From: Octopus bimaculoides
Lineage: Eukaryota
Direction of reading: 5' to 3'
Length of the DNA: 64,000 bases
Assembly: GCF_001194135.2 (NCBI RefSeq)
Contig: NC_069001.1
Location: 4,029,382-4,093,381 of the forward strand
Part shown: one piece after another, positions 1,971 through 33,100 of the stretch
How the letters are laid out: each line of letters begins with the position of its first letter
How positions within the stretch are numbered: position 1 is the first letter of the stretch
The notes under the pieces: generated by a model
Told to the model about the DNA's origin: nothing
Database searches by the model: none
The model's input: the letters and a program-made list of their open reading frames with translations, nothing else
Program-made: the position numbers and the translations under genes

Positions 1971-1983
1971 GGCTAAACAGACA

Positions 1984-2794: not shown

Positions 2795-2874
2795 TCTTCG
2801 CATATGATGTAGTGGTTAAGAGTGCGGGCTACTAACCCCAAGATTCCGAGTTCGATTCCAGACAGTCTTGAACA

Positions 2875-3038
2875 GGTACTACTTAAATACAGAGGTCCTG
2901 ACTCATCTACGCAACCCTATCTCTAGTTAACCGTAAAACTAACCCTAACCTTATAACTAACCCTAACCCTAACGAGTGCGCACTGTAAAAGCATATCATT
3001 ACGTAGATGCATCGGGACGTCTGTATTTAAGTAGTACC
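2875..3038. mobile_element. Non-autonomous DNA transposon (Merlin- or hAT-like), 19-bp TIR and 8-bp TSD
   Basis: TIRs GGTACTACTTAAATACAGA / TCTGTATTTAAGTAGTACC, flanked by the direct repeat CTTGAACA (2867-2874, 3039-3046). It interrupts a tRNA-like SINE head starting ~2806. Confidence 0.7.
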
Positions 3039-15149: not shown

Positions 15150-16272
15150 TCAGTTGTGATATAATAACTGGAGATTGAAAGAAGAAAACAAGAGACATGT
15201 GAATGACATTGAGAAGTAAGAAAACAACAAAGTGACGCCAAAGAAAGTCTATACACAACAGATGATAAATATATTGATTTATAACTGAGATGGTTAATAA
15301 TGCCTGCCGGACTTCGCTTTATTGTAAATAGATCTAGGTTTTAAGAGGGTTTAGATATTAAACAAAGACAACACATTGATGAGACTTATTGGTTGTTACA
15401 CTATATTAAAATGTTCGATTTCGTTTATCTTTGTGGAAACAAAACAAATCTTTGAGTTGGAAAAGTGACTCGTAAATAATAAAGAGACAGAGAGAAAGAG
15501 AAAGGAAGAATAAAGCGTTTGTCTGTGTCTGTCTATGCGTGTATGTGTGTNNNNNNNNNNNNNNNNNNNNNNNNNNNNNNNNNNNNNNNNNNNNNNNNNN
15601 NNNNNNNNNNNNNNNNNNNNNNNNNNNNNNNNNNNNNNNNNNNNNNNNNNNNNNNNNNNNNNNNNNNNNNNNNNNNNNNNNNNNNNNNNNNNNNNNNNNN
15701 NNNNNNNNNNNNNNNNNNNNNNNNNNNNNNNNNNNNNNNNNNNNNNNNNNNNNNNNNNNNNNNNNNNNNNNNNNNNNNNNNNNNNNNNNNNNNNNNNNNN
15801 NNNNNNNNNNNNNNNNNNNNNNNNNNNNNNNNNNNNNNNNNNNNNNNNNNNNNNNNNNNNNNNNNNNNNNNNNNNNNNNNNNNNNNNNNNNNNNNNNNNN
15901 NNNNNNNNNNNNNNNNNNNNNNNNNNNNNNNNNNNNNNNNNNNNNNNNNNNNNNNNNNNNNNNNNNNNNNNNNNNNNNNNNNNNNNNNNNNNNNNNNNNN
16001 NNNNNNNNNNNNNNNNNNNNNNNNAAACAATATTTGTTGCAACTTTTTTTTTTCCTTCCGATAGTTATTAGTGTGACGGGAAGGGAGACGGACTAGTTTC
16101 GTTTCGTTTGTATCAAAGTTTTTATATAGTCTAATGTTGTAATTATATAAACCGGATGTATATATCCCCGACTATATAAAGCGCGTGAGTACGTGTTTCG
16201 GTCATTTGCGGAGCAGTTTGTTGGCTGTTGCTGAGGTATGTGCTTTATAAGTCAATCAGCAAGACTGGGGGG
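15150..16272 (+). repeat. Near-identical segmental duplicate A (promoter plus first exon of snoRNA host copy 1; includes N gap 15551-16024)
   Basis: Matches 26770-27923 almost base for base on both sides of the gap; only a few substitutions seen (e.g. gacatt/gacatc, gtgacgcc/gtgtcgcc, aaagagac/aaagggac). Confidence 0.9.
16173..16241 (+). promoter_or_regulatory. Pol II core promoter of snoRNA host gene copy 1: TATA box, Inr, first exon, 5' splice site
   Basis: TATATAAA at 16173-16180; Inr-like TCATTT with A+1 at 16204, 31 nt from the TATA start; ATG-less 32-nt exon 16204-16235; donor CTGAG|GTATGT. Confidence 0.7.
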
Positions 16273-16681
16273 AAACCATAGCGTATATGTAAGATATATA
16301 CAGCTTAAGCATGTTGAAAACAATCCATAGTTTAAGACTTAGCCATTTTAGTAATCGAACTATATTTTTTCATGATGTATTAACGTTAATCTCCTTTCTT
16401 CATAGATCAGTATGTATTTTATGACTAGAATTAATATATACTTATTTTTTTCGCTTTTCCGGTGAATCTAAATATTTTTTTATCTTTTATCTCTTGATAA
16501 AAAGACATGACTTTAATGTAATATGTATTTTGTGTATAGATTTACGGTGATCTAACTGAAACGGTTCTGCCGTGAGTGGAATCTGCGGTAACCTGCAGCC
16601 ACGTGGATTCATCTGTTGCATTCCGTTCTCACACATTACTACACGTGGTCTCTTGCTGTTTATTGTGCTACTGATTTTTCT

Positions 16682-16803
16682 ATTTCGGTGATGACATTCG
16701 CTATTCTGAAGATCAGTTGTTCTCTTCGCGGTGCAGTTTTTGTGCTTTCGAAGTTCTGACAACTTTTTACATTGCTGTCTTTTGAGGCATTTGTCTGAGA
16801 AAT
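16682..16803 (+). ncRNA. SNORD15: C/D box snoRNA, U15/SNORD15 family, copy 1
   Basis: Stem ATTTC/GAAAT, C box GTGATGA 16688-94, D' CTGA 16706-09, D CTGA 16795-98. The D guide GAGGCATTTG is complementary to the conserved 28S CAAAUGCCUC, and the 3' end GAGGCATTTGTCTGAG is as in U15. Confidence 0.8.
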
Positions 16804-17293
16804 TACATTCAGTACAGTCCTAATTGGGTTTTTTTTTAAATCCTACCCTGCTGTCCATACGACTACCAGAGTCTGCTTTTGTATAGGTTTTTTTAGTTCT
16901 ATATCTTTTATAGTTTCAAATATATGTGTTGCGGTTAATTTTTTATATCGTTTCAGTGAGAAATTGTTAAGCTTGATGGATTCGTAAAATTTTTGTACCC
17001 AAGCTGTCCGCATGTGTCGATCGAGCCATAATTTACTAGTGTATCAATTAGTAGCCCTTTAGTGTATGCCTGTTTTTAATGGTAGCTCTTTCATTTGTCT
17101 CATTTAAATTAAGAGATGTTTTGCTAGTTAGTTTTAATTTTTACAGAAGCCATTAGGATGTTAATTTTCGTCGTTCCTCGTGGGCGATCTGTGTACTGCC
17201 GTCTGTTACGTTTGACCTCAACCTTACTGTGACGGTCAACAATGTTACCCTTGCTAAATATATCACTGTACCGTTGTAGTTCTACGGAAATGT

Positions 17294-17363
17294 CCCAAGG
17301 GTGATGATCTTGTGGATCGACTGATTGTCTTGACGATTTCCTTTTGCCCCTATCTGACTTGGG
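17294..17363 (+). ncRNA. C/D box snoRNA family B, copy 1 (D guide snR60/U80-like; D' guide possibly snR62/U34-like)
   Basis: Stem CCCAAG/CTTGGG, C GTGATGA 17301-07, D' CTGA 17321-24, C' TTGACGA, D CTGA 17354-57. The D guide CTTTTGCCCCTAT pairs with 28S AUAGGGGCGAAAG. Confidence 0.8.
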
Positions 17364-17368
17364 GATCC

Positions 17369-17787
17369 AGATGGACTATATGTAATCTGAACCTTTCCAC
17401 CCCTTATTTTTTATTTTTTACCTAATCCCACGTTTTAGGCTATGGCGATTCTGATTCTGAAAAAAAAAAATTTCAAATTTTCGATTTCTCCCCCCCCNNN
17501 NNNNNNNNNNNNNNNNNNNNNNNNNNNNNNNNNNNNNNNNNNNNNNNNNNNNNNNNNNNNNNNNNNNNNNNNNNNNNNNNNNNNNNNNNNNNNNNNNNNN
17601 NNNNNCTAGTTTTGTGAGATTTGGCTGTTATTTCTAGCATGTTAATAGCCTGCTTGGTGGTAGGGGGGAATTGAAATTTTTCAAACAATTTTTTTTCAGA
17701 ATCGGAATCTCCATAGCCTAAAACGTGGGATTCCGTAAAAAAAAATAATAAATAGGGGGGGGGGTTCAGATTACATATAGTCCGTCT
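17369..17787. mobile_element. Foldback/MITE with long (>100 bp) terminal inverted repeats (internal N gap)
   Basis: agatggactatatgtaatctgaacc...cccacgttttaggctatggcgattctgattctgaaaaaa is mirrored by ttttttcagaatcggaatctccatagcctaaaacgtggg...ggttcagattacatatagtccgtct. Confidence 0.75.
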
Positions 17788-17833
17788 CCGCTATAGATTT
17801 GAGTATGCCATCGTGGCGTGGAATACAAATTAC

Positions 17834-17871
17834 GGCGATCTTACGTTAAGGACTTGTAACGTAAGATCGCC
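17834..17871. repeat. Perfect 14-bp inverted repeat GGCGATCTTACGTT-N10-AACGTAAGATCGCC
   Basis: Read directly. The same arms occur at 37596-37641 (18-nt loop), and a single arm at 28003-28016. Confidence 0.9.
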
Positions 17872-18161
17872 AAAATGACTGTTATACATCAGCTTCTTCG
17901 CATGTTATTTAGATCACTTCCGTTTGTCTCAAAGGGTGTTTATCCCTGACTTTTAATAAGAATAACCCCTCAAGGGAAAGCACGATGTCTGCCTTTGTTC
18001 ATAGACCGACTCAAGCACTCGGGTCCAGGTAACTTACTGTACAAAATATGGAAAGTGCTATGTGGGGCTGGGTGACAGAATTAGTTATACTGTTAATGGG
18101 CGGTCAACAATTGTAAAAGTGATTTATGGACATCCTGTTATAGTATCAACATTACCAATGC

Positions 18162-18255
18162 GTTCTGATGTTGTGATGAACATTGGGTCGGAGTACTGTG
18201 CTATTTTCAGCAGTGATGACAGCTCTACTCGTTCACTTCTTCTGAATATCAGAAC
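18162..18255 (+). ncRNA. C/D box snoRNA family A, copy 1 (target unassigned)
   Basis: 10-bp terminal stem GTTCTGATGT/ATATCAGAAC, C GTGATGA 18173-79, D'-like CGGA 18189-92, C' GTGATGA 18213-19, D CTGA 18242-45. Two paralogues are in the window. Confidence 0.8.
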
Positions 18256-19270
18256 CTAATTCTGTGAGCTCTATAACCCTTCAGCATGCAGATTATTCGG
18301 TCATATGTATTACTTATTCGCATTTTGAGTCAATCGTGCTTTAACCCGTAGCTTTGAGATTTATTTTTAGAATATTGTTGGATATGTGTGAGATACCAAA
18401 GATGGTCGGTTTGAATGTTAGTGTTACTCCTGGGTTCCTTTTGCGAATTGGCTTTTTAAATCTGTTTTGTGTAAAGTTTAATAAAATATGTTTATAAAAG
18501 ATAAACCTTTCCATGTCCCCCCTCCTATTCTAAAATATTTTACTTGTTTGATGTGACCCAAAAGTTTGTTTATAGCTTCGGTTGCATTTCGTGTTACTCT
18601 TCCAAGGGCGTATAGAATAGGTATGTATTGTTTCGTTCGTGTGCATCATGTACTGAAAGTTCTGGCTGCTTTTCTCGATTCTCCAGTGTTTTGCAAAATC
18701 AAGCTCATACTATGAATAAAATTTGTGCAACTTTTGTAGTGGTGGGGTGGGCATCCTGCGGGCGACTAACAATGTTGCAAAGAATAGGCAGCCATTTGAA
18801 AGATCTTCATTTTTAATTACTATAGTTTAGTATCAAGCGTCAGGTGAAATCGTAGCCATGGTACATAAAAGCATCCATTACATTCTCTTACTGGTTAGCA
18901 TCAGGAAGGGCGTGCAACTGTAGAACCTGTGCCGAATCAGACAGGAGTCTGGTGCCGCCCCTCAGCTTGCCAACATGGACAGCGGACGTTAAAATGATGA
19001 TAATGTGGTACTTTTGAAATATGCAAAGGTGCTTTAATGGATTGAAGAATTTCCCTGGTGAAGTTTTTTTGCCTTTGTCTCACTTAGGACATTTCGTTGA
19101 TGTTTTCACTTACATATACTGTTGTGTCTGGGGAGAGTCGTTCTCTTTTAGTGCATTATAATTTAACGGACTCACCGGTAAGGTTTCTACTTAATTCCTT
19201 TATTTTCGTTGCGTCTTACAAGAAGCAACGAAGATTTTAGAAAAAATAATCCTCTCTCTATATTGCTTTT

Positions 19271-19343
19271 GTCCTGAGGATGATGATCTTGTGGATCGAC
19301 TGATGTCTTGACGATTTTCCTACGCCCCTATCTGACTAGGGAC
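19271..19343 (+). ncRNA. C/D box snoRNA family B, copy 2
   Basis: C ATGATGA 19280-86, D' CTGA 19300-03, C' TTGACGA, D CTGA 19332-35. The D' guide TCTTGTGGATCGA is identical to copy 1; the D guide is CGCCCCTAT. Confidence 0.8.
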
Positions 19344-19519
19344 TATTTATGAATATTATGAGTGGGATAAAATTAGTGATAGTGTGGTCCTATTGAAATA
19401 CACACAGGAGGTACTTTAGTGGATTGAATAAGTTCCCTGGTGAATTATCTTAGAACATTTATATTGTAGGTGGATTAGGAAATGATTTCATTTTTTTCAG
19501 TGGACAATGTATGGAAATA

Positions 19520-20602
19520 TAAAAAGGGTGCTGTTGGAAAGTTACTGGCTTTAAGGGTAAAGCTGGGAGGTAGGTCAGAAGATATGCAAAATATCATGAT
19601 GGTATACGATATATCTTTCTCTTTTTTGCAGATTTAACGCATGATGGCAGCTCCTAGTGTGTTTTGATAACATTGAAGTACAAGCAGTAATGAAGTCCCT
19701 CTTTCTGCAAGGCAAACAACCAGCAGAAATCCCTAGCAAGATGAAGGAAGTATTGAAAGATGGCTGTCCATCTTATTCCACGATAAAAATCTGGCTGACA
19801 AGGTTTCAGACCGATCATTTTGAGGTCATAGATAAACCCCAGTTGGGACAGCCAACTTCTGCAACTACAGAGGACTGCTGGATCTCAGCTGAGACTCTAG
19901 GGATTTCCTGCGAAAGATTTCATCACACCATCCATGACATTCTAGGCATGAGAGGGTTTTCTGCAAAGTGGGTGCCAAAATAGGTACATCAAAATGACAG
20001 CAGAAGTTGATTTTATGGCTCGTTTAGTCACCACAGGTGGAACTAGGCTTCATCGTTATGGTCCCCGGACCAAGCAGCAATTGGTGGAATGGTATCACAG
20101 TGGTTCACACCACATCCCAAGGCGTTTTGGACACTGAAAACAAGATTTTGGCTTCAGTGTTCTGGGACAAAGCTGGAGTATTCATTTTAGAATACCTGCC
20201 AAAGGGTCACACCATCAATGCAGAAATGCCATGGAAAACTGACCCATGATGTCTTGTTTTTGTAGGGTAGTGCACCAGCACATGAAACCCTAGAAAAAAT
20301 ACACAGCTTTGGCTTTAAATTGGTAGTCCGCTCCTGACTTGACCCCCTCTCACTATCACCTCTTTTCATAACTGAAAAAACAGCTCAACAGAATGAAATT
20401 TCATTCTGAGAAGTGATTGTTGCTACAGAGGCATGGTTAGAGGCCCAACCTTCCAAGTTCTTTTTTCAGGGTTTAGAAAAACTGAAGGACTGCTGTGGTA
20501 AGTTTGTGTATCTGAAAGGGGAGTATGTTGAATAAAATCATTAACTGATCCTCCTGTATTTTCTTTTATCCAAGGTCTGGAACTTTTAAGTATCCCCTTG
20601 TA
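19520..20602 (+). mobile_element. Decayed Tc1/mariner (mariner-type) transposon with transposase pseudogene
   Basis: Fragments carry HTH-region text (EVQAVMKSLFLQGK..EI...CPSYSTIKIWLTRF), WVPK, ILASVFWDKAGV..EYLPKGHTINAE and a broken PDL.PS.YHLF motif. Degenerate TIR-like ends; multiple stops and frameshifts. Confidence 0.8.
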
Positions 20603-20612
20603 TGTAATAAGT

Positions 20613-20701
20613 TCTGATATTATGATGAACACAGGTCGGAACACTGTGCTATTTTCAGCAGTGATGACAGCCCTACTTGTTCACTACTTCTGAATATCAG
20701 A
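20613..20701 (+). ncRNA. C/D box snoRNA family A, copy 2
   Basis: Stem TCTGATAT/ATATCAGA, C ATGATGA 20622-28, CGGA 20637-40, C' GTGATGA 20661-67, D CTGA 20690-93. Confidence 0.8.
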
Positions 20702-23619
20702 CACTAATTGTGTGATGTCTTGATCTTTGATTCCCTTTCACTGATTCATTTCTTAAATCAACATTTTGTAATCATGAAATTCAATAAAATATTTTTATTA
20801 AAAAAAAAAACCTGTCTGTGCTTCCCTTCCTCTATTATGAAAGTAAATCTGTTTTTAGTCCAGTTGGATTTCATCTCACTTTTTCAAGGACATGTACTGA
20901 ATTGAAGTTTGGGCCACTGACCTACATTTCCGATGCTTTACAAAGCCAAGATTGACCAGTACTATTAATCCTTTGACATTCAGATTAATTTGTCAAATGT
21001 AATGATTATTCATCACATTTTTTTTAAAAATCATTTAGTGTCTTGTAGTTTCAAGATTTTGAAAATGTGATTGTTTATTTTTAGAAAGACATTGTAGGGT
21101 GGGTGTGAGAGGTTGAGGCTGGTCAGTTTCAACATAGTGCAGTATTTGGGCTAGGTATGGCCAGTTTAAATTTTAAAAAGTTATTAAACATTTAGCTCCT
21201 GCAGGAGAGGGTTCTTCCATTTTGGGTTTTTCATTCTGGATCTCAAACCATGCAAAGAAACTTCACTTTTAATACATTAGAAGAGGATTAATAAGAGTCT
21301 TGTAATATTTTGAGGAAAGTCAGCTCTATTATATTTTACACTAGCAGATAGGGGGATACAACTCTGGGGTTGTTTCAGTCTTATTAAACTTTGGTTGAGT
21401 ACAAGAAGTGGAAAGTTAACATTGGTAGCCACAAAAACACTGGTATTGATTTAGAATTTTAATCCTACAAGTATGGAGTGATTTGGTCTAAATGATTCAA
21501 TACCTGAGAGAGGCAAACAAGGGCTGCCCCCAGGTAGTACATGCACTAGCTACACCACTTCATATTGCTCAAAGACACACTAATCTGTAACTGTTATAGT
21601 TTTATCTAGTTAGCAGTTTTTAGTGAAACTGGTAACAGTTCTTAGAATATAAATCTCATTAAGCAGCTGCTTCAATAGCAATTAGGTTGACGGGGGGGGG
21701 GGGTTCTTCTTGAAACCATCTTATGACATGGTTAATGATATTTATCCACAGCTTAAGCATTTGTTGGAAATTTTTGCAATATGCTTTGACATTAAGAAAC
21801 ACCTTTTCTGGCAAACCCTACCAGTGCATGCAAAAATATCAGGTATTTCTTAACAAAACATGGTGGCTGTATGCTTTACCAATATGTTGTACAGCATACA
21901 AATGGGCTCGGTATTTCATTCTTTAGTATTCTGACTATTTTGTTGAATGTAATACTTGTTTATTCACAAGTTTTGAATTCTCTTGTAGCTTTGAGATTTC
22001 TATGATGTAGTTTAGTTTTAGAATGACATTGGAGAGTAGGTGTGATGAGGATTCGCATTTACAGCCATCAAGTGATGTCTAATCATGGCACTTGACTGTG
22101 GCCATGCTAGAGCACTGCCTTGAAGGGTTTTAGTCGAGCAAATCAACCCCAGGACTTATTTTTTGTGAGCCTAGTACTTATTCTATCAGTCTCTTTACTG
22201 AGCTGCTAAGTTATGGGGACTTAACACACCAACACTGGTTGTCAAGTTGTGATGGGGAACAAACACAGAAGATATATATATACATATATACGATGGGCTT
22301 CTTTCAGTTTCAGTCTACCAAATCCACTCAAGGTTTTGTTCAGCCTGTGGGTACGGTTGAAGACACTTGCTCATAGTGACTGAACCTGGAATCAAGCTTA
22401 CCAATATTTAGCAGAAGTAATAGTGACTCAAGGTCTGAGACTTTTATACCTTGACACTAGAAACTCAGACTTTGAGTCATTCTTAGTGCTAAATATTAAA
22501 AAAAAGAAATTTACACATGCTCATATTTGGAGTTGTTTTCACTGTGCAGCTTAGCAGTTCCAGTCAAGCTGTCTAGCATGGAAAGCAGACATTAAATGAT
22601 GATATATATAAAATATACTACAGGCTTCTTTCAATTTCTGCCAAACAAATCCACTTACACATTTTGGTCTAGCTGAAGCTATATAGTAGAACTCACTTGT
22701 CCAAGGTGCCATGCAGTGAGACTGAACTCAAAACTGAGAAGCAAGATTCCTAAGTACATTATCAAGAAAGTTTCTAAAAGCAATTTCTAGAAATAACGAA
22801 TTCTGCTGGCAGCATTGCATTGATTTGTACTAATACTTCCAAGATAGCAAAACTTGTTCATAACTCTGACAGGTTGACTATTAATTACAAGATTATTGGA
22901 GTTATGTTCCCATGACAGTCATTGATTTGGTTTCATCAAAATTAATTAATAAACCACATTCAGGGTTTTTTGTTTTTTTTTTCTTGACATTTTTAACATT
23001 CACTTTTCGATGCTCACATAGTTCAGAATTTCTTGAAGCAAATTTTGAATGGTTAGATGGTTCAGTGGTTCTTGTCAACCCTCACCTGTTTTCAAGTAAG
23101 GTAATATTTTCTTTCATGACTGGACATGTTTTTATGGAGGATTGAAAATGAATGGAACTACCTTTTTTGAAAGTAATGATGATTTACAAATAAGATGCAT
23201 GAATATACAACGAAATTCAGTTTCTGTCAAGGAAATCCGCTCACAAGGCTCTGATCAGCCTCAGTCTATAGAATACTCTTGTCCAAGGTGCCATGCAATA
23301 AAACAACCAAGGGTGGTTTTTCTTTTACTTGTCTCAATCATTTAACTGGAGCACTGCCTTTAATTAAAAGGGTTGGTGAGTGAATTTAACCAGATAGCTA
23401 TGCCTCTTTGTCTTCAAAATGTCTCATCAACGTCATTATGATTCTCATTTCGGGGATCATTCATGTAATGACATTTTTGGTTCAATTAATTTTGAAAATA
23501 ATGAAGAATTTATTAAAATAACTTTATTAAGCTGGTATTTAGAACATAAATTAACATGAGATTTCGATGGAAGGATTTTAAATCACTTTGAAATAATATT
23601 TGTAGCATAGAACTAGGAA

Positions 23620-25000
23620 CGGTCTCAGGTGGGTTGGTGTCGGATAGTTATTAACGACCTTTGAAATCTAGAACATTCTTCAGAGTATTACAGTTGATAC
23701 AATACATGAGGTTGGTGGAGGTGAGGTTAAATTGGTTAATGAGGTGGAATTGAGGATTATGAGCACGCCATTAGAAATGAAATCAAATGTAGAGCTGGAG
23801 TATTTAAAGGCATCAGGCTATTAGTGGGTGAAGGGAATTTTTTTTAGAGGTCCCTTTTGAAAAAGAAGAGTTGGGGATTAAGAAAGACTGGTAATTAAAG
23901 TTAATATGGATAGCTGATTGAAGAGGCATGTCAGACAAGTGAAAGTCATAGGAAGAACTTTTTGGGTTTGTGTGTTTAGAATAAAAGAGCAGAGGTTTTG
24001 GGAATCACTGGAATGTAGAATAATAGACCAACACTTCAGTGTCATGCTGTGCCAGGAAGACATGCTGCATTTCATCAGTTTTGTAAATAGATATTGGAAT
24101 CAAAATTTATTGATGGTTCCGGTGTGAGTCATATCGATGGTTCTGGTGTGAAATGAGGAGGCAATGTAAAGATAATCAATACTGACAGGAAGATACCAGA
24201 AGTATTTGAGCTGGTAGAGATAAATCCAAAAGATGGGTGGTAAGTGTTGAAGATAATTTCATGTGAAGAGTGTCTCATCATTTAACATTCATTTTTACTT
24301 GTTTGCATGGGTGAGAAGGAATTTGAGTTTATCTTGGTAGTTATGGCTTCCCTGAGAGATTGTTGACAGAATTTATTGAACAAGGAATTAACGGTAAGGA
24401 CAAGTTTAGCTTTAGAAGAGAAGTGATACCAGGTGAAGACTGGAAGTCACAGAAATGTTTAACAGCTTAAATCTTGTCGTTGATGGAATGGCTGCACAAG
24501 TGGGAAACAAATAACGTTGAGAAATAAAGGAATGAATGATTAATATCCTTGGTACATTGAAACAGGTGAACAAGAGGTGATACGAGTTTATCAAGGTAAC
24601 TGGAAAGAAGTCCAATGGGAAACCGGATGGTTGCGTTGTGTAGATTAGAGAGAAAATAGAAGGTATACGATGATGAGGTTAATAGAGGTGGAGGTGGCTG
24701 CTAAAGAAGTGATCAGTTCCTCAATAGTACAGTGGAATATTTGATTATTGGGTCGCGTATTATTGAGCTGTTGGGATGACGTCTCTCAGTAAAAGTCACT
24801 CCATCAAACAACAGCATCACTCTCTCGGTAGGTTTGATTTTGTCATTACTCCCGCTTATGAGTATCAGAGTTCATCAACCGTGATAGTCTGGGTTCCTTT
24901 TTCAAATTGAATAAATTCTGACAGCAATATTTCATCACAGATCGAACTATTCCAAGTCATTTGTTTATATCATGCTGTTCTGTTTAACATAGATAACCAA
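23620..25000 (-). mobile_element. Highly decayed Penelope-like retroelement remnant (tentative)
   Basis: Minus-strand pieces include TSTNLMYCINCN, which resembles the GIY-YIG-proximal TS.N.IYCI.C motif. Frames are heavily broken and boundaries are rough. Confidence 0.3.
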
Positions 25001-26769
25001 AAGCATCAGTGTGCAGAGATCTATTTTCCGTGTGTAAATAAAGAATTTAAAAATTAAGCCTTCGATGAACAATAAAACATAGAAATGGAACCTTCAGCAT
25101 CCGACAGGGATACAATTTATCATGAATGGTAACTATAGCATTATGTGGAACGGTAGACGTTAATTGAGGGGAAGCTGGCTGGCGAGTTGGAGTTTGGTGA
25201 ATTTTATTGGTGTTGAAAAAGCCAATAAGGGGTGCTATTCGCTGTTCATAGATGTGCATATGTTTATCGAACAAAATACGAGTGAACAGAACAGGTGAAC
25301 AAACGATGGCGAGATGTATACTGTAATGAACGAAGTCACGGTAAAGGTTGTTTGTGTTAGGTGAACCTCTTAGACTTGCTGAGCCCTATTTGAAGTTACA
25401 CCTAATTATTGACCACACCCAATTATTCCGACCCTTCACTATTATCCACACAGTACTGTCATTTCCGAGATGCAATATCATATAATGGTGTTGCTTGCTA
25501 GACACGGCATGGATAGGGATCAATGGTGATAGCAAATCGAACGGAAAAGCATGCATAAGGCATGCAAGATGCGAATGAAATTGTATAAAGTTATTACCTC
25601 TTATCCGGAACTCTCAAGCAACCGGTTTCAAGGGAAAATAAAGTTTTGTAAATTAGAGTCAAAACAATTTGTATTAATTAACTGTCCTTATAAGAAAGTT
25701 TCTACTGCATATTTCACTGCATTTACAGTACCTGCATTTTATTTGGTTAATGAAGCTTGTTATTTAATTAAATGAAATTATATCTTCATTTGTATTTCGT
25801 TTCTACTATATGCAGAATATTAATTTTATATATATAAATCGAGAGAGAGAGAGGGGAGTTTTAAAATTTGTAAGGCGCTATGGTAATTTAAAAAGTGATG
25901 ATCAGATATACGGAAAATTCAGTTATCCAGCCACACTCCGATCCCTGTGGTGCTGGATAGGCGGGAGTTTACTTTGTGTATGTGTGTGTACATTTTGACG
26001 TCCAGGAATTACTGGACAATTTTATTCAGAGGCGGCGGAGATGTATGTTTTGAAAGAGATTTGGCTGCTTTATCTAGCAAATCAAGTAATCATAACTATT
26101 ATGTATGCTCCTCCTGCATTGGTTCATGTACAGGGCAGTGTTATTGTTTAACCCCGGGTCACTGAGCGAATAGACCTTATGATTAACGGCAGAGCAAGCA
26201 CGACTGTTTCTTCGTTCACCAAGACACTATATTAACCAGTTGTTTGGTTAAGATAGTAACTTCTAATTTGAGGGAGATTTGGCTAATATTTCTAGCAGGG
26301 TGAGATGTTAATGCAGAGCCCAGGACCGTCTCAGCAGCATTATAGGCCACCGGGGAAACCAAGAATCTTGGCCCTATTGATTTATTGGCAGCAAACCACA
26401 GCATACATAAATCATAAGTAAGCCCCTAGGCAACTGCCCTGTGTGCCCATATCTTAAGAGGACACCGATACTGGCTGTTGTTCACTTGGACATTGGTGAT
26501 TCAGGGGATGAAATAACAGATAAAGGACTCAATACTCGATTTGAACAGGACTGGTCAGGTAAGGTAAATAAATATGGATGATTATGGACAGTACTATGGT
26601 GAGATGGTCAAAAAAATAAGCAGAATTTGCCGCGGAGGTAAAGAATACGTACACCACCCTGCTTTCGGCGTAACAAAAACACTAACCCTAAACACCGGGT
26701 GTACGTATTCTTTACTTTCGCCAAATTTGCTTCATGTTGAGGACAGTAGCGGTAGCTAGAACTGATGAT

Positions 26770-27923
26770 TCAGTTGTGATGTAATAACTGGAGATTGAAA
26801 GAAGAAAACAAGAGACATGTGAATGACATCGAGAAGTAAGAAAACAACAAAGTGTCGCCAAAGAAAGTCTATACACAACAGATGATAAATATATTGATTT
26901 ATAACTGAGATGGTTAATAATGCCTGCCGGACTTCGCTTTATTGTAAATAGATCTAGGTTTTAAGAGGGTTTAGATATTAAACAAAGACAACACATTGAT
27001 GAGACTTATTGGTTGTTACACTATATTAAAATGTTCGATTTCGTTTATCTTTGTGGAAACAAAACAAATCTTTGAGTTGGAAAAGTGACTCGTAAATAAT
27101 AAAGGGACAGAGAGAAAGAGAAAGGAAGAATAAAGCGTTTGTCTGTGTCTGTCTATGCGTGTNNNNNNNNNNNNNNNNNNNNNNNNNNNNNNNNNNNNNN
27201 NNNNNNNNNNNNNNNNNNNNNNNNNNNNNNNNNNNNNNNNNNNNNNNNNNNNNNNNNNNNNNNNNNNNNNNNNNNNNNNNNNNNNNNNNNNNNNNNNNNN
27301 NNNNNNNNNNNNNNNNNNNNNNNNNNNNNNNNNNNNNNNNNNNNNNNNNNNNNNNNNNNNNNNNNNNNNNNNNNNNNNNNNNNNNNNNNNNNNNNNNNNN
27401 NNNNNNNNNNNNNNNNNNNNNNNNNNNNNNNNNNNNNNNNNNNNNNNNNNNNNNNNNNNNNNNNNNNNNNNNNNNNNNNNNNNNNNNNNNNNNNNNNNNN
27501 NNNNNNNNNNNNNNNNNNNNNNNNNNNNNNNNNNNNNNNNNNNNNNNNNNNNNNNNNNNGATATATAATTGTGTTTTAAACATATAATCTTAATAATATA
27601 CTTGCTTTGTTTTCACATTCTAAGAATAACTTTTAAAAGTTTATAAATCAAGTATTGTTTACATGTATATAAATAAACAATATTTGTTGCAACTTTTTTT
27701 TTTCCTTCCGATAGTTATTAGTGTGACGGGAAGGGAGACGGACTAGTTTCGTTTCGTTTGTATCAAAGTTTTTATATAGTCTAATGTTGTAATTATATAA
27801 ACCGGATGTATATATCCCCGACTATATAAAGCGCGTGAGTACGTGTTTCGGTCATTTGCGGAGCAGTTTGTTGGCTGTTGCTGAGGTATGTGCTTTATAA
27901 GTCAATCAGCAAGACTGGGGGGG
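26770..27923 (+). repeat. Near-identical segmental duplicate B (promoter plus first exon of snoRNA host copy 2; includes N gap 27163-27560)
   Basis: Matches 15150-16272; offset after the gaps is 11650 bp. Confidence 0.9.
27823..27891 (+). promoter_or_regulatory. Pol II core promoter of snoRNA host gene copy 2
   Basis: TATATAAA 27823-30, Inr TCATTT (A+1 27854), exon 27854-27885, donor GTATGT; identical to copy 1. Confidence 0.7.
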
Positions 27924-28466
27924 AAATCATAGCAATATTAAGATATCTTAAGTTGGAAACGATCTCACTTTAAACTACTTAATTTTAGAATTTAATAAGT
28001 TAGGCGATCTTACGTTTATTTAGGAGGAACAGTATGGATGTGAGACAATGGCGACATCGACATCTTAATTTCATTGCATACATACGCATTATTTTAATTA
28101 GTTGAATATTAGTTTCATTCAGTATGAAGTAATGTAAATCTTATCTAAAATATAAAGATCAATTAGTAATTTTAAAGGCGACTTTTCATTTCACTGTCGC
28201 TTGATATCCAATTCATGGATTTCATTTTATTTAAAACATCGTTTTCTTATGGTAATTAGGATTCTCTTTCGAATTTTAATTTCTTAGTTAATCGATCGGT
28301 AGGATTCTTTTTAAAAGTTTAATTTCTTTATTAGTGAATCGATCGGTGAACAATCGAGGCGCCCTGCGGAAAATTGGCGGCAACCATAACCACGTGGTGT
28401 CGTCTATTGCATATCTTCAGAAAACTACTACACGTGGTGGCCTTCTGATTTAGTATTACTGCAGCT

Positions 28467-28590
28467 ATTTCGATGATGACACGATGACGAGTCTGAGGGC
28501 AATTTGCTTTCTTCGTGGTACAGTTTTTGTACTTTTGAAGTTGAGTTAACTGCCATATCTGCTGCTTTTAGAGGCATTTGTCTGAGAAAT
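28467..28590 (+). ncRNA. SNORD15: C/D box snoRNA, U15/SNORD15 family, copy 2 (canonical double guide)
   Basis: Stem ATTTC/GAAAT, C ATGATGA 28473-79, D' guide GATGACGAG plus CTGA 28493-96 (pairs with 28S CUCGUCAUC), D guide GAGGCATTTG plus CTGA 28582-85. Both ends match recalled vertebrate U15 (GATGACGAGTCTGA...TAGAGGCATTTGTCTGAG). Confidence 0.88.
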
Positions 28591-29049
28591 GGCTGCTTTC
28601 AATGCTTCATTCATACTATGCCCCGAGTAGTCTTTCTAATTAATCTCTGGAACTCGATCTATTTTACGTCACGAATTGGCATGCTTTTTCGAGAAGCAGG
28701 CCGCACTATAAGAAAATCGGGGTAATTTTTAGTTAGGTGCGCAGTTAAGGAGTCATGCGAGCTCTATATAATATAATACTAATGGTAATTTTTCGCTAGG
28801 CGTCCTATTGTCGTAGTGAGAAATAGTAATTTTTCGTTAGGCATTCCATTTAAAGTCCCGCAGGTTCCCTCGTAATTGATTTACAGTAAATCTTTCTGCG
28901 TTTTCTCTTTTTTAGTTGGGGTTAGCAAGAATGTATCTGGTGTTCAGCTAGCAGTATTTATAGTTTTGATAATTATTAGTTTAAAACAAAATGCCTATTA
29001 GAGGTTATTTGTGTGGTTGAATTTTAATAAGGTCTACGATCGTGCTGTG

Positions 29050-29118
29050 TGCCCTGATGAGTTCTTGGACTAGAGTCTCTGAAAAATTTCTATTTGAAGA
29101 CAAACTGTCCGCTGAGCA
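29050..29118 (+). ncRNA. SNORD52: C/D box snoRNA, U52/snR78-like
   Basis: C TGATGA 29055-60, D' guide GGACTAGAGTC (pairs with 28S GACUCUAGUC; the +5 rule hits the U of GAC[U]CUAG), D' CTGA 29079-82, C' TTGAAGA, D CTGA 29112-15. An outer stem GTGCTGT/ACAGCAC is present. Confidence 0.75.
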
Positions 29119-29697
29119 AGTAATACAGCACCTTTCGTTATCTGTCGATCATGCCATGTTTGTTCACGTGGTGTATAAATTAGTAGTAAGCTTCGCGAGT
29201 CATTCATACCGCAATCGGGTCTGTATCGCAGCTTAAATTTTTTTACTTTCTCGGTCACTTTAGTTAAGTTAGTCGTTCTTTTTCCTGCACGACCATTATT
29301 TTTAAACAGGGTATGATTTGGTTGCTATTTTTAGCAGAAGTGGGTTTCCGTATTTTTTACCCTCTGAAAATGTTCATGGACTGGGTGTTTAGTTTCAACG
29401 GGTTCACTTTTATTCTACTCTAGAATCGTTTTTGATTAGTTCATTTCTAAATATTTCGATTTATTTGGTCGACTACATAGTGCAGTGTTGATAATTGGCG
29501 CTGATTTTTTTTTAAATTTAGATATACTGAAATGGTTTACGACGATTACCTTTTCGTTCATGAATAGGGTCAGATACTTCGTCTTTATGCCGGCATTNNN
29601 NNNNNNNNNNNNNNNNNNNNNNNNNNNNNNNNNNNNNNNNNNNNNNNNNNNNNNNNNNNNNNNNNNNNNNNNNNNNNNNNNNNNNNNNNNNNNNNNN

Positions 29698-29748
29698 CGA
29701 CTGATTTCCTTGACGATTAGTCCTTTTGCCCCTATCTGATTTGGGACA
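29698..29748 (+). ncRNA. C/D box snoRNA family B, copy 3 (5' part hidden in N gap 29598-29697)
   Basis: CGA-CTGA, C' TTGACGA, extended guide GATTAGTCCTTTTGCCCCTAT (vs 28S AUAGGGGCGAAAGACUAAUC), D CTGA 29736-39. Confidence 0.75.
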
Positions 29749-30084
29749 TTTCATTAGTTTCTAACATCCGTTTTTCGTGCTAGCATGGGTTGGGCAGTTT
29801 GACCAGACCTGGTAAGGACTGGCCGCATGAGGCTCCAACGTGGCGGTAGCAGTATATATATCCACGTGCTAGGGTGGATCGAAGAGGCGCATTTTTCAAT
29901 GAAATTCGATTTTTGGTACAGATGTAAGTAAAGGTATTCATTCTCGTATTAATAAATTGTAACATTGAATCGATACTTCGAAAAATAGGGTGGTTTCGTA
30001 TGATGAATGACGTATGTGCATATGTGCTTGCAATAGTTTTGGTTCTTCTATGAAATGTTTTTATTGTTTAGAATAAGCAAAATT

Positions 30085-30175
30085 TCTGATATGATGATGA
30101 ACACTAGGTCGGAGTACTGTGCTATCTCTAGCAGTGATGACACCTCTACTCGTTCATTTTTTTCTGAATATCAGA
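30085..30175 (+). ncRNA. C/D box snoRNA family A, copy 3
   Basis: Stem TCTGATAT/ATATCAGA, C ATGATGA 30094-100, CGGA 30110-13, C' GTGATGA 30134-40, D CTGA 30164-67. Confidence 0.8.
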
Positions 30176-33100
30176 GGCTTATTCGGTGCAGCATAAAGAC
30201 TTGCCATGTTTTACACGGCCAGTGGGATGGAGCTTTTGAGTTCCGGAAAATGTCCATTCTGTGAGAATGCCAGTGTGTAACAAATTTTGTGCTGTTCGAG
30301 GTGGGGGGTATGAAAAGTTCATAGGCTAACAATGAGTGATGTTAGAGCTGTGAGATCTTCCATACATCAATTTCAACCTTTATTTATAACGACATACTTT
30401 CTTTCCAGGTAAACTTGACATTTGGCTCTTCAAACAAGGCTTAAGAAAATAACTGGTACTGACTTTTGAGATAGGACGAAATTTGTTATCAAATACCTGA
30501 TATTGGTGTGGTTGCTACATCAAGGGGGCACTCCAGCTTTGCTAACAGTGCAAAAGTGAGCAGCTGAATTCCAGAGGGGAGGCAAGAGTCTCAGATTACC
30601 CAAGGGCCAGATGTCCCACAACTGCCCCAACCCTGGGTTCTCATTCCTAAGTTTTTCAATATGTATCTCCATGCAGGAATTGCTAGATGTATTTATTGCA
30701 AAGAGTTTCTTTCTCTAATGCTTTACATAGTTTAACCCTACATAAGTTAATGTGTGAGTAACTAAACAGGAATTTTGAGAGAAGTGTATGTAAAATTAGT
30801 TTAGTATACATCATGGCTATGGGGATCCATAAATAGAAAAAGAATGGTCAAGAACCACTAGGATTGGATGCTAGACTAGAGTATTGAATTTAATTCAACA
30901 ACACAAATGCTGGTCCCAGTATGTTGCTGACCACTAAACTCTTACCCTATAGTGTAATCCTTAAGTTGAATAATCCACATTGACTGCAGCTTGTATTCTG
31001 TTGCGTAAACCTGTTAACACACTCATATTCTCTGCAGTAAAATTTAGTTGTCTTCATTAAAAGCCTGGTCCGGTTTATAGCTAATAAAAATCAAGAGACT
31101 CCATATGTCTATTTGTAAGAGCTGGTCTTTTGGAGCATGCTTGTCCATACCGTCTCAACTTTCACCTAGGCATTGTTAGTTTAAGTATCCTAGCATCTGC
31201 TCTGCTCTCACACATCCTGAGTTTTAGAGGTTACTAAAATTAGAGCCATTTGGAATAAGGACTTCTCCCTCAGGCAGATTGTATGAAGCCTGTGTGTGTG
31301 GACAGATATACTACATGGCAGTGAAACAGATTAACTGCAGAGGACATGTGAAGGCTTGAAATGAAGCCAGCATGTTGTGGATGTGCTGGTATGGCACTGA
31401 TTTGTATGAATGAAAACAGCTACATAATGAAGTGGTGAGAAATAGTATTACATTTGACAGTAATCTAGATGTTTACGGATTAGCAAAGTATAGAACCAAC
31501 AGGGAGACTAGTTGCTTGACTTGCTAAAAATAGCTACATCAACCCCTTTCAAAATAGATTTGAGTTTTTTTTATTGCATAGGAAAAATGAGATGTGATGG
31601 ACCATTGTTGGCATCATGTTGACCATAAGGTTCCTAAACTTTTTCAAGCTGCAACCCCTTTGACACCCCAACTAACCATAACAAACACACCTCTCTCAAG
31701 CAAATTCAAAGCAATTGTATTTCACAAATAAAACTTAACCTAATAAACCCATTATTTTGTTGTTTTTACATGAATCACGACCCCATTATCACCCCACTTT
31801 TCTTCAATGCCTCCAGGGGGTGCAAAACCACTGATGTAGGGTAATGGAGCCCAAGATGTCATCAGGCTATTCAATCAGAAGTGACCTAGGGTTAAAGAAC
31901 AATGTTTAAATCTTTACTCTGCTTGTGTTCTCAGAATTGGAGTTATTTTAAATACTGAACAGGAGGCTGATTTCCAGAGGGTATTCCAGACGCATCATTT
32001 AACATCCACATTTTTGCAGGGGTGGTCTCCAGGCTTAGGTCAACCCAGGGATAGAGTTGAAATCACTGGGTCATAATATACTGAACTCGAAACCATGTGG
32101 TTGGGAAGAAACCTAATAACACAGCCACACTCGTACCTATATTAACGATGAAGACAGTAATTTCTACCACACTAAGCAAGTGTGCTAGTTTGACCATATA
32201 CCTGGCTAACAAATGAACATAGCTATGGTGTAGAGGAAAATAAGCCATCCACTGGTGTTATGGGCTCAAAGGGTTAATTTGAATTACAGCATAGCTAATC
32301 CAGACGATTAGAATCTGATTTGTGAGGGTAAGAAATGAATCACTAATGCATTCTTTGTACAGAAATTACAAGAACAAATCACTATATTCGGAGAAGACAT
32401 TTCATGAAGCTCTGCTGTGTAATCTGAATTTGGTGGGTTTTAGATGAAAGATTTACAGAAATGCAGCACTTGTACATGAAATGAAGGAATAAATTTACAA
32501 TTTAGCATGCACTAACACAGACCAGGTCATTAATTTCACAGCATAGACTCACATACTGCCTGCTACTGTATCTGTAAAGGATCGAGTTTAAGTAATCAAT
32601 AAAACAATAATTTGGGTTTAAAAAGTGTTTAATATAAAATGAATACAAAACACTGATTTTAAAAACTGACAAAGTAAAAAGGAACAAACAAGTGAAATAA
32701 ATGAGCAAAAATACAGAAATGTCCAACTAGGTTTTCTTATTTCAAATGGTGTAAAAATTCAAATCTTATATTGGTAAATTGAATACAGAAGAATGCATGT
32801 GTGTATATGTATTTGGTTACATATAAATTTTACAAAATGGGAGGAAACATTAAAAAATGGAATTCCATTTAAAGTAAAGAGAATTTTGTGTTAGTATATA
32901 AAAAAAAATTGGGTATTAACATTGAATAGAACACTTTACAAATCAGCAATAATATAGAGCAAGCCCTACACAGAAAGTCTTTGTATTAAATATATTGAAA
33001 TGACCAAATATTTAATTAAAAACAAGTCAGGTTTTGGGGGGTTTTTTTGTTTTTTTTTCTAAACTGAACAAGAGTTAAAACATTTAAAGAACTTTGGGAA

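What the first reader, a model, noticed from the sequence alone, without database searches (positions are those of the whole stretch)
16173..30175. Hidden tandemly duplicated non-coding polycistronic snoRNA host gene
Seen: two TATA/Inr promoters with canonical spacing and an ATG-less 32-nt first exon, each followed on the same strand by stem-closed C/D-box units. Copy 1 order: U15, decayed U52, B, A, B, A. Copy 2 order: U15, U52-like, B, A. No non-TE ORF is present. Established: animals express intronic snoRNAs from non-coding hosts (GAS5/SNHG, Drosophila Uhg). As recalled, the vertebrate counterparts of these guides sit in separate hosts (U15 in RPS3, U80 in GAS5, U34 in RPL13A). Inference: a cephalopod-specific UHG-like cluster with its own guide assortment, invisible to ORF-based annotation.
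Basis: partly seen in the sequence, partly recalled or inferred. Interest (0 to 1): 0.8.

Follow-up and report, generated by a model that had tools for sequence, protein, structure and literature searches.

The report
Duplicated non-coding snoRNA host gene
This stretch holds two tandem copies of a spliced, non-protein-coding gene whose introns carry small guide RNAs (box C/D snoRNAs) that direct methylation of ribosomal RNA; the arrangement is well known in flies and mammals, so this is a new example, not a new kind.

Summary
On the + strand between 16.6 and 30.2 kb a simple scanner finds seven stem-closed C/D-box units, against 0.37 expected by chance in the whole window. Two more were found by other means.

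- **Unit identities:** Rfam recognises two U15 units and one U52 unit, all below the curated cut-offs. Family B carries the snR60/U80 guide.
- **Promoters:** The two TATA promoters plus a 32-nt first exon are 100% identical over 248 nt. RNA contigs begin 5 nt inside the proposed start.
- **Splicing:** RNA reads show GT..AG splices 16235>19632, 27885>30409 and 29923>30409.
- **Coding potential:** Mature RNAs carry poly(A) signals and no ORF apart from mariner remnants.

Several snoRNAs share one large intron. The terminal exon of copy 1 is a decayed mariner element that also contains unit A2. The B units form a roughly 244-nt tandem array, partly hidden in gap 29598-29697, with box-dead relics in copy 1.

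Not tested: mature snoRNA ends, the methylation itself, and presence in other cephalopods.

Verdict: a real, expressed UHG/GAS5-type host gene, and a new member of a known kind.

The parts
16173..16180 (+). TATA box of copy 1 (TATATAAA), 31 nt upstream of the proposed start
   Evidence: Sequence. It lies in the 248-nt block that is 100% identical to copy 2.
16204..16235 (+). Exon 1 of copy 1: 32 nt, no ATG, followed by the donor GTATGT
   Evidence: Joint 16235>19632 with GT..AG ends in X37, X38 and X19. The unspliced contig starts at 16209 in X25, which has no cover between 16124 and 16208.
16600..16647 (+). Pair of E-boxes (CACGTG at 16600 and 16642) in a conserved block upstream of U15-1
   Evidence: The 100-nt 5' flank of U15 is 59% identical between the copies, against a shuffled maximum of 51%.
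16682..16803 (+). U15-1, a box C/D unit. The D guide is kept; the D' guide is lost.
   Evidence: Rfam SNORD15 35.4 bits, E 1.5e-4; alignment with U15-2; scanner hit.
16986..17011 (+). Possible relic of U52, in the syntenic position, with boxes destroyed
   Evidence: Local alignment to 29083-29112 scores 21; 18 of 300 shuffles reach it. Inconclusive.
17292..17365 (+). B1, a box C/D unit of snR60/U80 type (D guide TTTTGCCCCTAT)
   Evidence: Scanner. The D guide pairs 13 bp with LSU AUAGGGGCGAAAG. Model R2 scores 103.5 bits.
17369..17787 (.). High-copy foldback transposon inserted just after B1. It holds gap 17498-17605.
   Evidence: Inverted repeat 17369-17492 / 17787-17663. RNA contig depth is 1500-5400 here.
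18162..18255 (+). A1, an orphan box C/D unit with a 10-bp terminal stem and boxes C, C' and D
   Evidence: Scanner; alignment A5; fold z -2.6; no Rfam family.
19021..19090 (+). Pseudo-B unit (X1); boxes C, D', C' and D are all mutated
   Evidence: Model R2 scores 19.2 bits, E about 0.009; alignment A7.
19271..19343 (+). B2, a box C/D unit of snR60/U80 type
   Evidence: Rfam snR60_Z15 15.6 bits; model R2 97.2 bits.
19399..19472 (+). Pseudo-B unit (X2)
   Evidence: Model R2 scores 15.3 bits, E about 0.1; 80% identical to X1; alignment A7.
19632..20810 (+). Terminal exon of copy 1: a decayed mariner element, then unit A2, then AATAAA at 20783-20788
   Evidence: The acceptor AG at 19630-19631 is used. 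Contig depth is 944 against 56-80 in the intron for X25, and 252 against 18-34 for X15. Pfam finds HTH_48 and Transposase_1.
20611..20703 (+). A2, an orphan box C/D unit lying inside the terminal exon of copy 1
   Evidence: Scanner; alignment A5; contig 20540-20810 at depth 596 in X25.
27823..27830 (+). TATA box of copy 2
   Evidence: Sequence; identity block.
27854..27885 (+). Exon 1 of copy 2
   Evidence: Joint 27885>30409 with GT..AG ends (X19 contig at depth 62, plus an X37 read). X37-X39 show essentially no RNA cover upstream of about 27759.
28391..28436 (+). Pair of E-boxes upstream of U15-2
28461..28596 (+). U15-2, a box C/D unit with both guides intact and an 11-bp terminal stem
   Evidence: Rfam SNORD15 63.2 bits, E 1.7e-11; fold z -3.4. 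The D guide pairs 10 bp with CCAAAUGCCUC in 42 rDNA loci.
29050..29118 (+). U52-2, a box C/D unit
   Evidence: Rfam SNORD52 37.5 bits, E 4.7e-5. The D' guide pairs 13 bp with GACUCUAGUCC.
29520..29747 (+). B tandem array: a truncated B, the spacer, gap 29598-29697 hiding at least one whole repeat, and the 3' half of B3. The period is about 244 nt.
   Evidence: 146 letters lie between 29597 and 29698, and a go-back join 29745>29548 is seen. The join has depth 38 against 12 for unique DNA in the DNA-like run X16. Alignment A7.
29750..29923 (+). Exon-like segment after the B array, ending at the donor GTAAGT
   Evidence: Joint 29923>30409 with GT..AG ends. An X26 contig joins 29718-29923 to 30409-31711. 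Depth is 8-11 against 1-2.5 in the intron.
30083..30177 (+). A3, an orphan box C/D unit inside intron 29924-30408
   Evidence: Scanner; alignment A5.
30409..31760 (+). Terminal exon of copy 2. Non-coding, with AATAAA at 31727 and 31742.
   Evidence: Contig depths are 70-82 against 10-19 in the intron. Stop codons occur in all frames and the longest ORF is 44 aa.

Best explanation
Two tandem paralogues, about 11.65 kb apart, of an RNA polymerase II gene that makes a spliced, polyadenylated, non-coding RNA. Its real products are the box C/D snoRNAs carried in the removed sequence.

Shown by sequence and reads:
- Each copy starts at a TATA/Inr promoter with a 32-nt first exon.
- Splicing joins exon 1 to a distant terminal exon: 19632 in copy 1 and 30409 in copy 2.
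- Copy 2 also has a splice 29923>30409.

Inferred by analogy with Uhg, GAS5 and SNHG genes:
- The excised intron RNA (or the unspliced precursor) is bound by C/D core proteins at each stem-closed C/D motif.
- It is then trimmed to 75-135-nt snoRNAs.
- U15 would guide 2'-O-methylation at the LSU CCAAAUGCCUCGUCAUC region, U52 at GACUCUAGUC, and B at UAUAGGGGCG.

Family A, and the invariant D' element of B (GUGGAUCGA), have no rRNA target among the rDNAs tested. They are orphans.

The locus evolves by birth and death: [B-A] module duplication, a B tandem array, box-dead relics, a U15 copy that lost one guide, and transposon insertions, one of which now supplies the terminal exon and poly(A) site of copy 1. 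The promoter, exon 1 and upstream block are kept identical between the copies. The likely cause is gene conversion or a recent duplication of that block (inferred).
For: Clustering of units:
- Seven scanner-detected units lie on one strand, against 0.37 expected by chance.

Family matches:
- Rfam SNORD15 at E 1.7e-11 and 1.5e-4, and SNORD52 at E 4.7e-5.
- The B D guide pairs 13 bp with the conserved LSU site in 107 of 120 eukaryote rDNA loci. The U15 D guide and the U52 D' guide pair with their family sites.
- Rfam's best match for B is snR60/Z15.

Selection on the units:
- Paralogous A and B units are 82-87% identical and the two U15 copies 73%, while 100-nt flanks are at the shuffled level of 43-52%.
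- A compensatory change in the terminal stem separates B1 (CCCAAG/CUUGGG) from B3 (CCCAAA/UUUGGG).
- Terminal stems appear in the minimum-energy folds.

Transcription and splicing:
- GT..AG splice joints run from exon 1 in several independent RNA runs.
- Terminal exons are 4-17 times deeper than introns.
- The transcript 5' edge lies at 27859 / 16209, with no cover over 27774-27858 in X25.
- Poly(A) signals sit at the ends of cover.

Coding potential:
- There is no ORF over 46 aa apart from mariner remnants.

Both copies are real:
- The DNA-like run X16 has the shared 5' block at depth 19 against 11-12.5 for the unique parts, and its graph branches at 27922.
Against: - No Rfam hit reaches its gathering score.
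- Guide-target pairing alone is not statistically strong. 5 of 60 shuffled guides do as well for B and U52, and U15 is no better than shuffles on 40 kb of rDNA plus spacers.
- Mature snoRNAs with defined ends were not seen, because the libraries available are standard RNA-seq.
- High read depth over B is largely explained by collapsed array copies.
- Several units share one intron and A2 is exonic. That is not the layout that works best in vertebrates.
- In X19 a contig runs without a break from upstream of the TATA box through exon 1, so some transcription may start further upstream.
- Conservation in other species was not testable.
Confidence: 0.82

Rival explanations
1. The snoRNAs are released from a polycistronic precursor by endonuclease cuts and exonuclease trimming, independently of splicing, as in plant and yeast clusters. 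The splices seen would then be incidental processing of a long non-coding precursor.
For: - Five units (U15-1, B1, A1, B2 and the relics) sit in one 3.4-kb intron, and U15-2, U52-2 and the B array sit in one 2.5-kb intron.
- Unspliced RNA is abundant in all libraries.
- A2 lies in an exon.
- The B units form a tandem array.
Against: Splicing from exon 1 is real and the spliced terminal exons dominate. A3 sits alone in a 485-nt intron, which is the classic layout. Nothing here separates the two release routes.
Confidence: 0.25
2. The units are decaying snoRNA pseudogenes or retroposed copies scattered in a transposon-rich non-coding transcript. They have no present function.
For: - Clear relics exist: two pseudo-B units, a truncated B, a possible U52 relic, and U15-1 without its D' guide.
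- Transposons lie between the units.
- Family A has no target.
Against: - Boxes, guide cores and stems are kept in nine units while flanks have drifted to random similarity.
- There are no poly(A) tails or target-site duplications around the units.
- The B-then-A order is repeated.
- The relics show what unconstrained copies look like here.
Confidence: 0.07
3. The 'duplication' is an assembly artefact. The two copies are alleles, or one 5' block was placed twice next to gaps.
For: The 5' blocks are 99-100% identical and both abut gaps (15551-16024 and 27163-27559).
Against: - The bodies differ in unit content, transposons and terminal exon.
- The shared block has about 1.6 times the depth of the unique parts in the DNA-like run X16, while the unique parts are at normal depth.
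- Both continuations after the shared block occur in DNA and in RNA.
- Exon 1 splices to acceptors specific to each copy.
Confidence: 0.05

Closest known systems
Drosophila Uhg genes (U snoRNA host genes 1-8)
   Same: - An invertebrate long non-coding RNA gene that is spliced and polyadenylated, with many C/D snoRNAs in its introns.
- 42% of expressed fly C/D snoRNAs sit in seven such genes (PMC11014333).
- E-boxes lie near the start and are bound by Myc (PMC4430873). Here six CACGTG motifs lie in the locus, including a conserved pair in front of each U15.
   Different: - The E-boxes here are 400-540 nt inside intron 1, not at the start site. Binding was not tested.
- The promoter is TATA + Inr.
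- Several snoRNAs share one intron.
- One terminal exon is transposon-derived.
- No sequence similarity of the host RNA is expected, and none was tested.
Mammalian GAS5 / SNHG1 (UHG) multi-snoRNA host genes
   Same: A non-coding, spliced host for many C/D snoRNAs. From my own knowledge (Smith and Steitz 1998), GAS5 hosts SNORD80, whose D guide targets the same LSU site as family B.
   Different: - From my own knowledge, the mammalian hosts are 5'-TOP genes with one snoRNA per intron. Here the start is TCATTTG, not an oligopyrimidine run, and introns hold several units.
- The D' guide of B differs from the U80/snR60 guide.
- From my own knowledge, U15 sits in RPS3 in vertebrates, not in a non-coding host.
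Rfam SNORD15 (RF00067), SNORD52 (RF00276), snR60/Z15 (RF00309, clan CL00070)
   Same: Boxes and guide elements match the family consensus: ACGAUGACGAGUCUGA and GAGGCAUUUGUCUGA for U15, GACUAGAGUCUCUGA for U52, and CGCCCCUAUCUGA for B.
   Different: All scores are below the gathering cut-offs: 63.2 against 75, 37.5 against 45, and 15.6 against 41. Internal regions have diverged. B carries a different, invariant D' element.
Plant and yeast polycistronic snoRNA clusters; multi-snoRNA introns of Drosophila
   Same: Several snoRNAs lie on one precursor or in one intron, with tandem duplication of units.
   Different: Here the precursor is a capped, spliced, polyadenylated gene with a short first exon. 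The release mechanism was not tested.

Membership tests
Box C/D snoRNA | C box RUGAUGA near the 5' end and D box CUGA near the 3' end, brought together by a terminal stem of 4 bp or more | tested here: met
   Seven units pass the scanner with stems of 5-11 bp, against 0.37 expected. B2, B3 and U52-2 pass by eye and by alignment. The stems appear in the minimum-energy folds.
Box C/D snoRNA | An antisense element of 10 nt or more ending next to D or D', placing a known rRNA methylation site at the fifth paired position | tested here: inconclusive
   - Met for the B D guide (13 bp), the U52 D' guide (13 bp) and the U15 D guide (10 bp); the U15 D' guide pairs 9 bp.
- Shuffled guides often score as well.
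- The site numbering rests on my own knowledge.
- Not met for family A or for the B D' element.
- Octopus rRNA itself was not available.
Box C/D snoRNA | Accumulates as a stable 60-150-nt RNA bound by fibrillarin, NOP56, NOP58 and SNU13 | not testable with these tools
   Only standard RNA-seq and assembled contigs were available. No sharp ends were seen at the unit borders.
SNORD15 (RF00067) | Score at or above the Rfam gathering score (75 bits) | tested here: not met
   63.2 bits (E 1.7e-11) and 35.4 bits. Both family guides are present in U15-2; only the D guide is present in U15-1.
SNORD52 (RF00276) | Score at or above the Rfam gathering score (45 bits) | tested here: not met
   37.5 bits, E 4.7e-5. 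The D' guide is identical to the consensus core GACUAGAGUCUCUGA.
snR60/Z15/SNORD80 (RF00309, CL00070) | Score at or above the gathering score (41 bits), with both family guides (GCAUAGUUCA before D' and CGCUCCUAU before D) | tested here: not met
   15.6 bits, E 2.3. The D guide is present and pairs with the family's LSU site. The D' guide is replaced by CUUGUGGAUCGA.
   SNORD34 is not among the matches for A1 even at E up to 10 with lax filters. The best match is SNORD69 at 15.8 bits, E 1.9.
Non-coding snoRNA host gene (Uhg / GAS5 / SNHG type) | Pol II transcript that is spliced and polyadenylated, with the snoRNAs in the removed introns | tested here: met
   Three GT..AG joints; AATAAA at the ends of cover. 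All units except A2 lie in introns or intron-like sequence.
Non-coding snoRNA host gene (Uhg / GAS5 / SNHG type) | No conserved protein-coding ORF in the mature RNA | tested here: met
   ORFs are 46 aa or shorter with no Pfam hit, apart from mariner remnants. Conservation across species was not testable.
Non-coding snoRNA host gene (Uhg / GAS5 / SNHG type) | One snoRNA per intron and a 5'-TOP start (the vertebrate hallmark) | tested here: not met
   Multi-unit introns of 3.4 and 2.5 kb. The start region GGTCATTTGCGG has no oligopyrimidine run.

The most novel reading that the evidence does not exclude
Family A (three constrained copies, no rRNA complement in 120 eukaryote rDNAs) and the invariant D' element of B are lineage-specific guides for a target that is not ribosomal or is specific to cephalopods. 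That D' element (GUGGAUCGA) is sense-identical, not antisense, to a 5.8S segment. In addition, the RNA running from the B array to the poly(A) site, which is 3.5-4 times more abundant than the upstream precursor in two libraries, would be a stable snoRNA-capped, polyadenylated non-coding RNA of the SPA type.
Probability: 0.1. Interest if true: 0.6.

Novelty: new member of a known kind. Interest (0 to 1): 0.3.

Why it matters
It adds an expressed, non-coding, multi-snoRNA host gene to the annotation of a cephalopod genome, where snoRNAs have so far only been counted by Rfam homology (PMC6962438). Gathering-score Rfam scans and ORF-based annotation both miss it.

It is also a compact picture of snoRNA birth and death:
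- module duplication,
- a tandem array hidden in an assembly gap,
- box-dead relics,
- loss of one guide,
- a transposon recruited as terminal exon,
- a promoter block kept identical between paralogues.

It does not change what is known about how snoRNAs are made.

Tried and rejected
- **Rfam at gathering scores:** nothing found.
- **Rfam on A1 and B2 alone, with lax filters:** only weak generic C/D hits. U34 for family A is rejected.
- **Guide-target search:** run against 120 eukaryote rDNA loci fetched from metagenomes.
  - It works for B-D, U52-D' and U15-D.
  - Shuffled guides do nearly as well on 40 kb, so pairing alone is weak evidence.
  - The best family A hit (14 bp with 3 G-U pairs) lies in an AT-rich spacer of a single locus and was discarded.
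- **Internal third promoter:** TATATATA at 29852 followed by CATTT at 29891 looked like one. Fine-scale depth shows no step there and cover continues back to the B array, so it was dropped.
- **High read depth over B3 as a sign of mature snoRNA:** mostly explained by reads from other array copies.
- **E-box pair as an RNA hairpin:** fold z-scores of only -1.0 and -1.7, so not supported.
- **'Decayed U52':** not significant.
- **First read-laying run:** lost to a filter at 22954-22993.
- **Small-RNA libraries:** not usable, because assembled 31-mers cannot hold reads that short.
- **Cross-species comparison:** not possible, because no eukaryote genome collection was at hand.

Full report
**1. 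What is in the sequence**

A scanner for [R]UGAUGA ... CUGA closed by a terminal stem of 5 bp or more finds seven units between 16682 and 30177, all on the + strand. It also finds three low-complexity hits elsewhere. Block-shuffled windows give 0.37 hits on both strands. Two more units, B2 and U52-2, are seen by alignment and by Rfam.

Rfam at gathering scores finds nothing in the window. In E-value mode it gives:
- SNORD15 at 28468-28590: 63.2 bits, E 1.7e-11.
- SNORD15 at 16683-16803: 35.4 bits, E 1.5e-4.
- SNORD52 at 29050-29118: 37.5 bits, E 4.7e-5.

Self-comparison gives two further families:
- Family B: 17292-17365, 19271-19343 and 29698-29747.
- Family A: 18162-18255, 20611-20703 and 30083-30177.

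The 'decayed U52' at about 16986-17011 sits in the syntenic place but is not significant; 18 of 300 shuffles reach its score.

**2. The two copies**

16025-16272 is 100% identical to 27675-27922. That block holds TATATAAA, the Inr-like TCATTTG, the 32-nt exon 1 and 37 nt of intron. 15150-15538 is 99% identical to 26770-27158.

Beyond 16273 / 27923 only the snoRNA units and a short block in front of U15 can be aligned. A and B units are 82-87% identical and the two U15 copies 73%, whereas 100-nt flanks are 43-52% identical, the level of shuffled flanks.

In the DNA-like run X16 the shared block has depth 19 against 11-12.5 for the unique parts, and the assembly graph branches at 27922. RNA shows exon 1 continuing into both copy-specific introns and splicing to copy-specific acceptors. 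The duplication is therefore real and not an assembly artefact. The identical 5' block points to gene conversion or a recent duplication of that block (inference).

**3. The gaps**

- **Gap 29598-29697 is not continuous.**
  - Reads to its left run on as TAGTTTTGTAGAAATAGCAG... .
  - Reads to its right are preceded by AGGTGTCCCAAAAGTGATGATTTCGTGGAT, which is the missing 5' half of B3.
  - Contigs place 146 letters in the gap.
  - A go-back join 29745>29548, with two variant letters, shows that B plus its spacer is tandemly repeated with a period of about 244 nt. In X16 the join has about three times the unique depth.
  - A truncated B lies at about 29520-29547.
- **Gap 17498-17605** lies inside a high-copy foldback element inserted right after B1.
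- **Gap 27163-27559** lies upstream of promoter 2, and RNA contigs run at least 457 nt into it.

**4. Transcription and splicing**

Ten RNA runs from the same species as the window hold the locus.

GT..AG joints:
- 16235>19632 (X37, X38, X19).
- 27885>30409 (X19, X37).
- 29923>30409 (X37, X39, X13, X15, X26).

Start of transcription:
- In X25 there is no cover over 27774-27858, and the unspliced contig begins at 27859 = 16209. That is 5 nt inside the start predicted from the TATA box.
- X37-X39 show essentially nothing upstream of about 27759.
- In X19, however, one contig runs from upstream through exon 1. Some upstream initiation, or DNA in that library, cannot be excluded.

Terminal exons are much deeper than introns:
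- Copy 2: 70-82 against 10-19.
- Copy 1: 944 against 56-80 in X25, and 252 against 18-34 in X15.

Cover ends near AATAAA at 20783, and at 31727 and 31742.

The mature RNAs have stop codons in all frames. The longest ORFs are 44-46 aa with no Pfam match, apart from two mariner remnants (HTH_48 and Transposase_1) in copy 1.

**5.

- The main splice of each copy removes a multi-snoRNA intron: U15-1, B1, A1 and B2 in 3.4 kb, and U15-2, U52-2 and the B array in 2.5 kb.
- Only A3 sits alone in a classic 485-nt intron.
- The terminal exon of copy 1 starts at a splice acceptor at the 5' edge of a decayed mariner element. It contains unit A2 and ends at a poly(A) signal about 80 nt after A2.
- A covariance model of B finds two box-dead relics flanking B2, at 19021-19090 and 19399-19472. 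They align with B plus its spacer. The B array therefore existed in both copies and is decaying in copy 1.
- U15-1 has lost the D' guide but keeps the D guide.

**6. Guides**

I fetched 120 eukaryote rDNA loci from metagenomes using a conserved LSU pattern and searched them for complements.
- **B, D guide:** TTTTGCCCCTAT pairs 13 bp (one G-U) with AUAGGGGCGAAAG in 107 loci.
- **U52, D' guide:** pairs 13 bp with GACUCUAGUCC.
- **U15:** the D guide pairs 10 bp with CCAAAUGCCUC in 42 loci, and the D' guide pairs 9 bp with the adjacent CUCGUCAUC.

From my own knowledge, these are the sites of the snR60/U80, U52 and U15/snR13-snR75 families. Rfam's best match for B is snR60/Z15, at 15.6 bits only.

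Pairing alone is weak statistically: 5 of 60 shuffled guides do as well for B and U52, and U15 is no better than shuffles. The argument therefore rests on the agreement with the family sites and on conservation of the guide cores among paralogues.

The D' element of B (GUGGAUCGA, invariant in all three copies) has no antisense match. Oddly, it is identical in sense to a 5.8S segment.

Family A has canonical C, C' and D boxes, a 9-10-bp stem and an internal hairpin. It has no rRNA complement and no Rfam family. SNORD34 is absent from its match list and the best match is SNORD69 at E 1.9. It is an orphan in this analysis.

**7. Mechanism**

Shown: a TATA-driven, spliced, polyadenylated, non-coding transcript in two paralogous copies, with constrained C/D units in the removed sequence.

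Inferred from the established biology of Uhg, GAS5 and SNHG genes: core proteins assemble on each C/D motif, exonucleases trim the intron or the precursor to the snoRNA, and the snoRNAs guide fibrillarin to the LSU sites named above.

Whether release needs splicing or endonuclease cuts is open, because several units share an intron.

Six of the window's 13 CACGTG motifs lie in the locus, including a conserved pair in front of each U15. Myc binds such E-boxes at fly Uhg and mammalian SNHG genes (PMC4430873). That is a lead here, not a result.

**8. Comparison and novelty**

Non-coding multi-snoRNA hosts are textbook. In Drosophila, 42% of expressed C/D snoRNAs lie in seven Uhg lncRNAs (PMC11014333). 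In the paper library I found no description of such a host gene in a cephalopod or other mollusc, only Rfam counts (PMC6962438).

This is a new member of a known kind. It has some local colour: a TATA/Inr start instead of a TOP start, multi-unit introns, a transposon-derived terminal exon, a hidden B array, and an orphan family.

**9. Limits**

- There is no direct evidence for mature snoRNAs or for methylation.
- There was no octopus rRNA to test the guides.
- No other cephalopod genome was available.
- The RNA data were unstranded.
- Contig depths are only rough measures of abundance.

Noticed in passing
window 27560-27773 (= 16025-16123) and the gaps to their left: A transcribed segment of at least 671 nt (X25 depth 127, X19 depth 20) ends at 27773 and runs into gap 27163-27559. 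A TATATAA on the minus strand at about 27797-27791 suggests a divergent transcript from a bidirectional promoter. There is no ORF in the readable part. The 30 letters read inside the gap begin, on the minus strand, with TGATGAG.
   Followed up: partly
window 16600, 16642, 28391, 28431, 29165, 29863: Six of the 13 CACGTG E-boxes in the window lie in the locus. One pair sits in a block that is conserved in front of both U15 copies, although the rest of intron 1 cannot be aligned.
   Followed up: partly
window 17292-17365, 19271-19343, 29698-29747: The invariant D' element of family B (CGTGGATCGA) is identical in sense, not antisense, to a 5.8S rRNA segment seen in a metagenome rDNA locus (L043). 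No antisense target was found.
   Followed up: partly
window 29718-31744: In X25 and X18 the unspliced RNA from the B array to the poly(A) site is 3.5-4 times deeper than the precursor upstream of the array (118 against 34, and 48 against 13). This could be 3' bias, an internal start, or a snoRNA-capped stable RNA.
   Followed up: partly
window 17369-17787: A foldback (inverted-repeat) element of very high copy number surrounds gap 17498-17605. Loose read ends at 17606 run into (CCCTAA)n-like repeats.
   Followed up: no
window 34385-36274, minus strand: A single 629-aa ORF with a weak OTU cysteine-protease domain (E 5e-4, just under the Pfam cut-off). It is convergent with the host gene. RNA cover at 32535-33330 may be its 3' UTR.
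   Followed up: partly
window 26681-26723: A 43-nt motif with very high depth in all RNA runs (560-2080) inside an otherwise silent region. It is part of a hairpin-like repeat that gave weak miRNA-model hits at 26620-26730.
   Followed up: no
window 30244-30408: Read depth rises about four-fold in the last 165 nt of the A3 intron, before the acceptor at 30409. This may be an alternative upstream acceptor or partial intron retention.
   Followed up: no
window 19115-19148 and 16820-16864: Two short segments inside intron 1 of copy 1 have contig depths 10-50 times their surroundings (for example 908 in X15). They are probably fragments of dispersed repeats.
   Followed up: no
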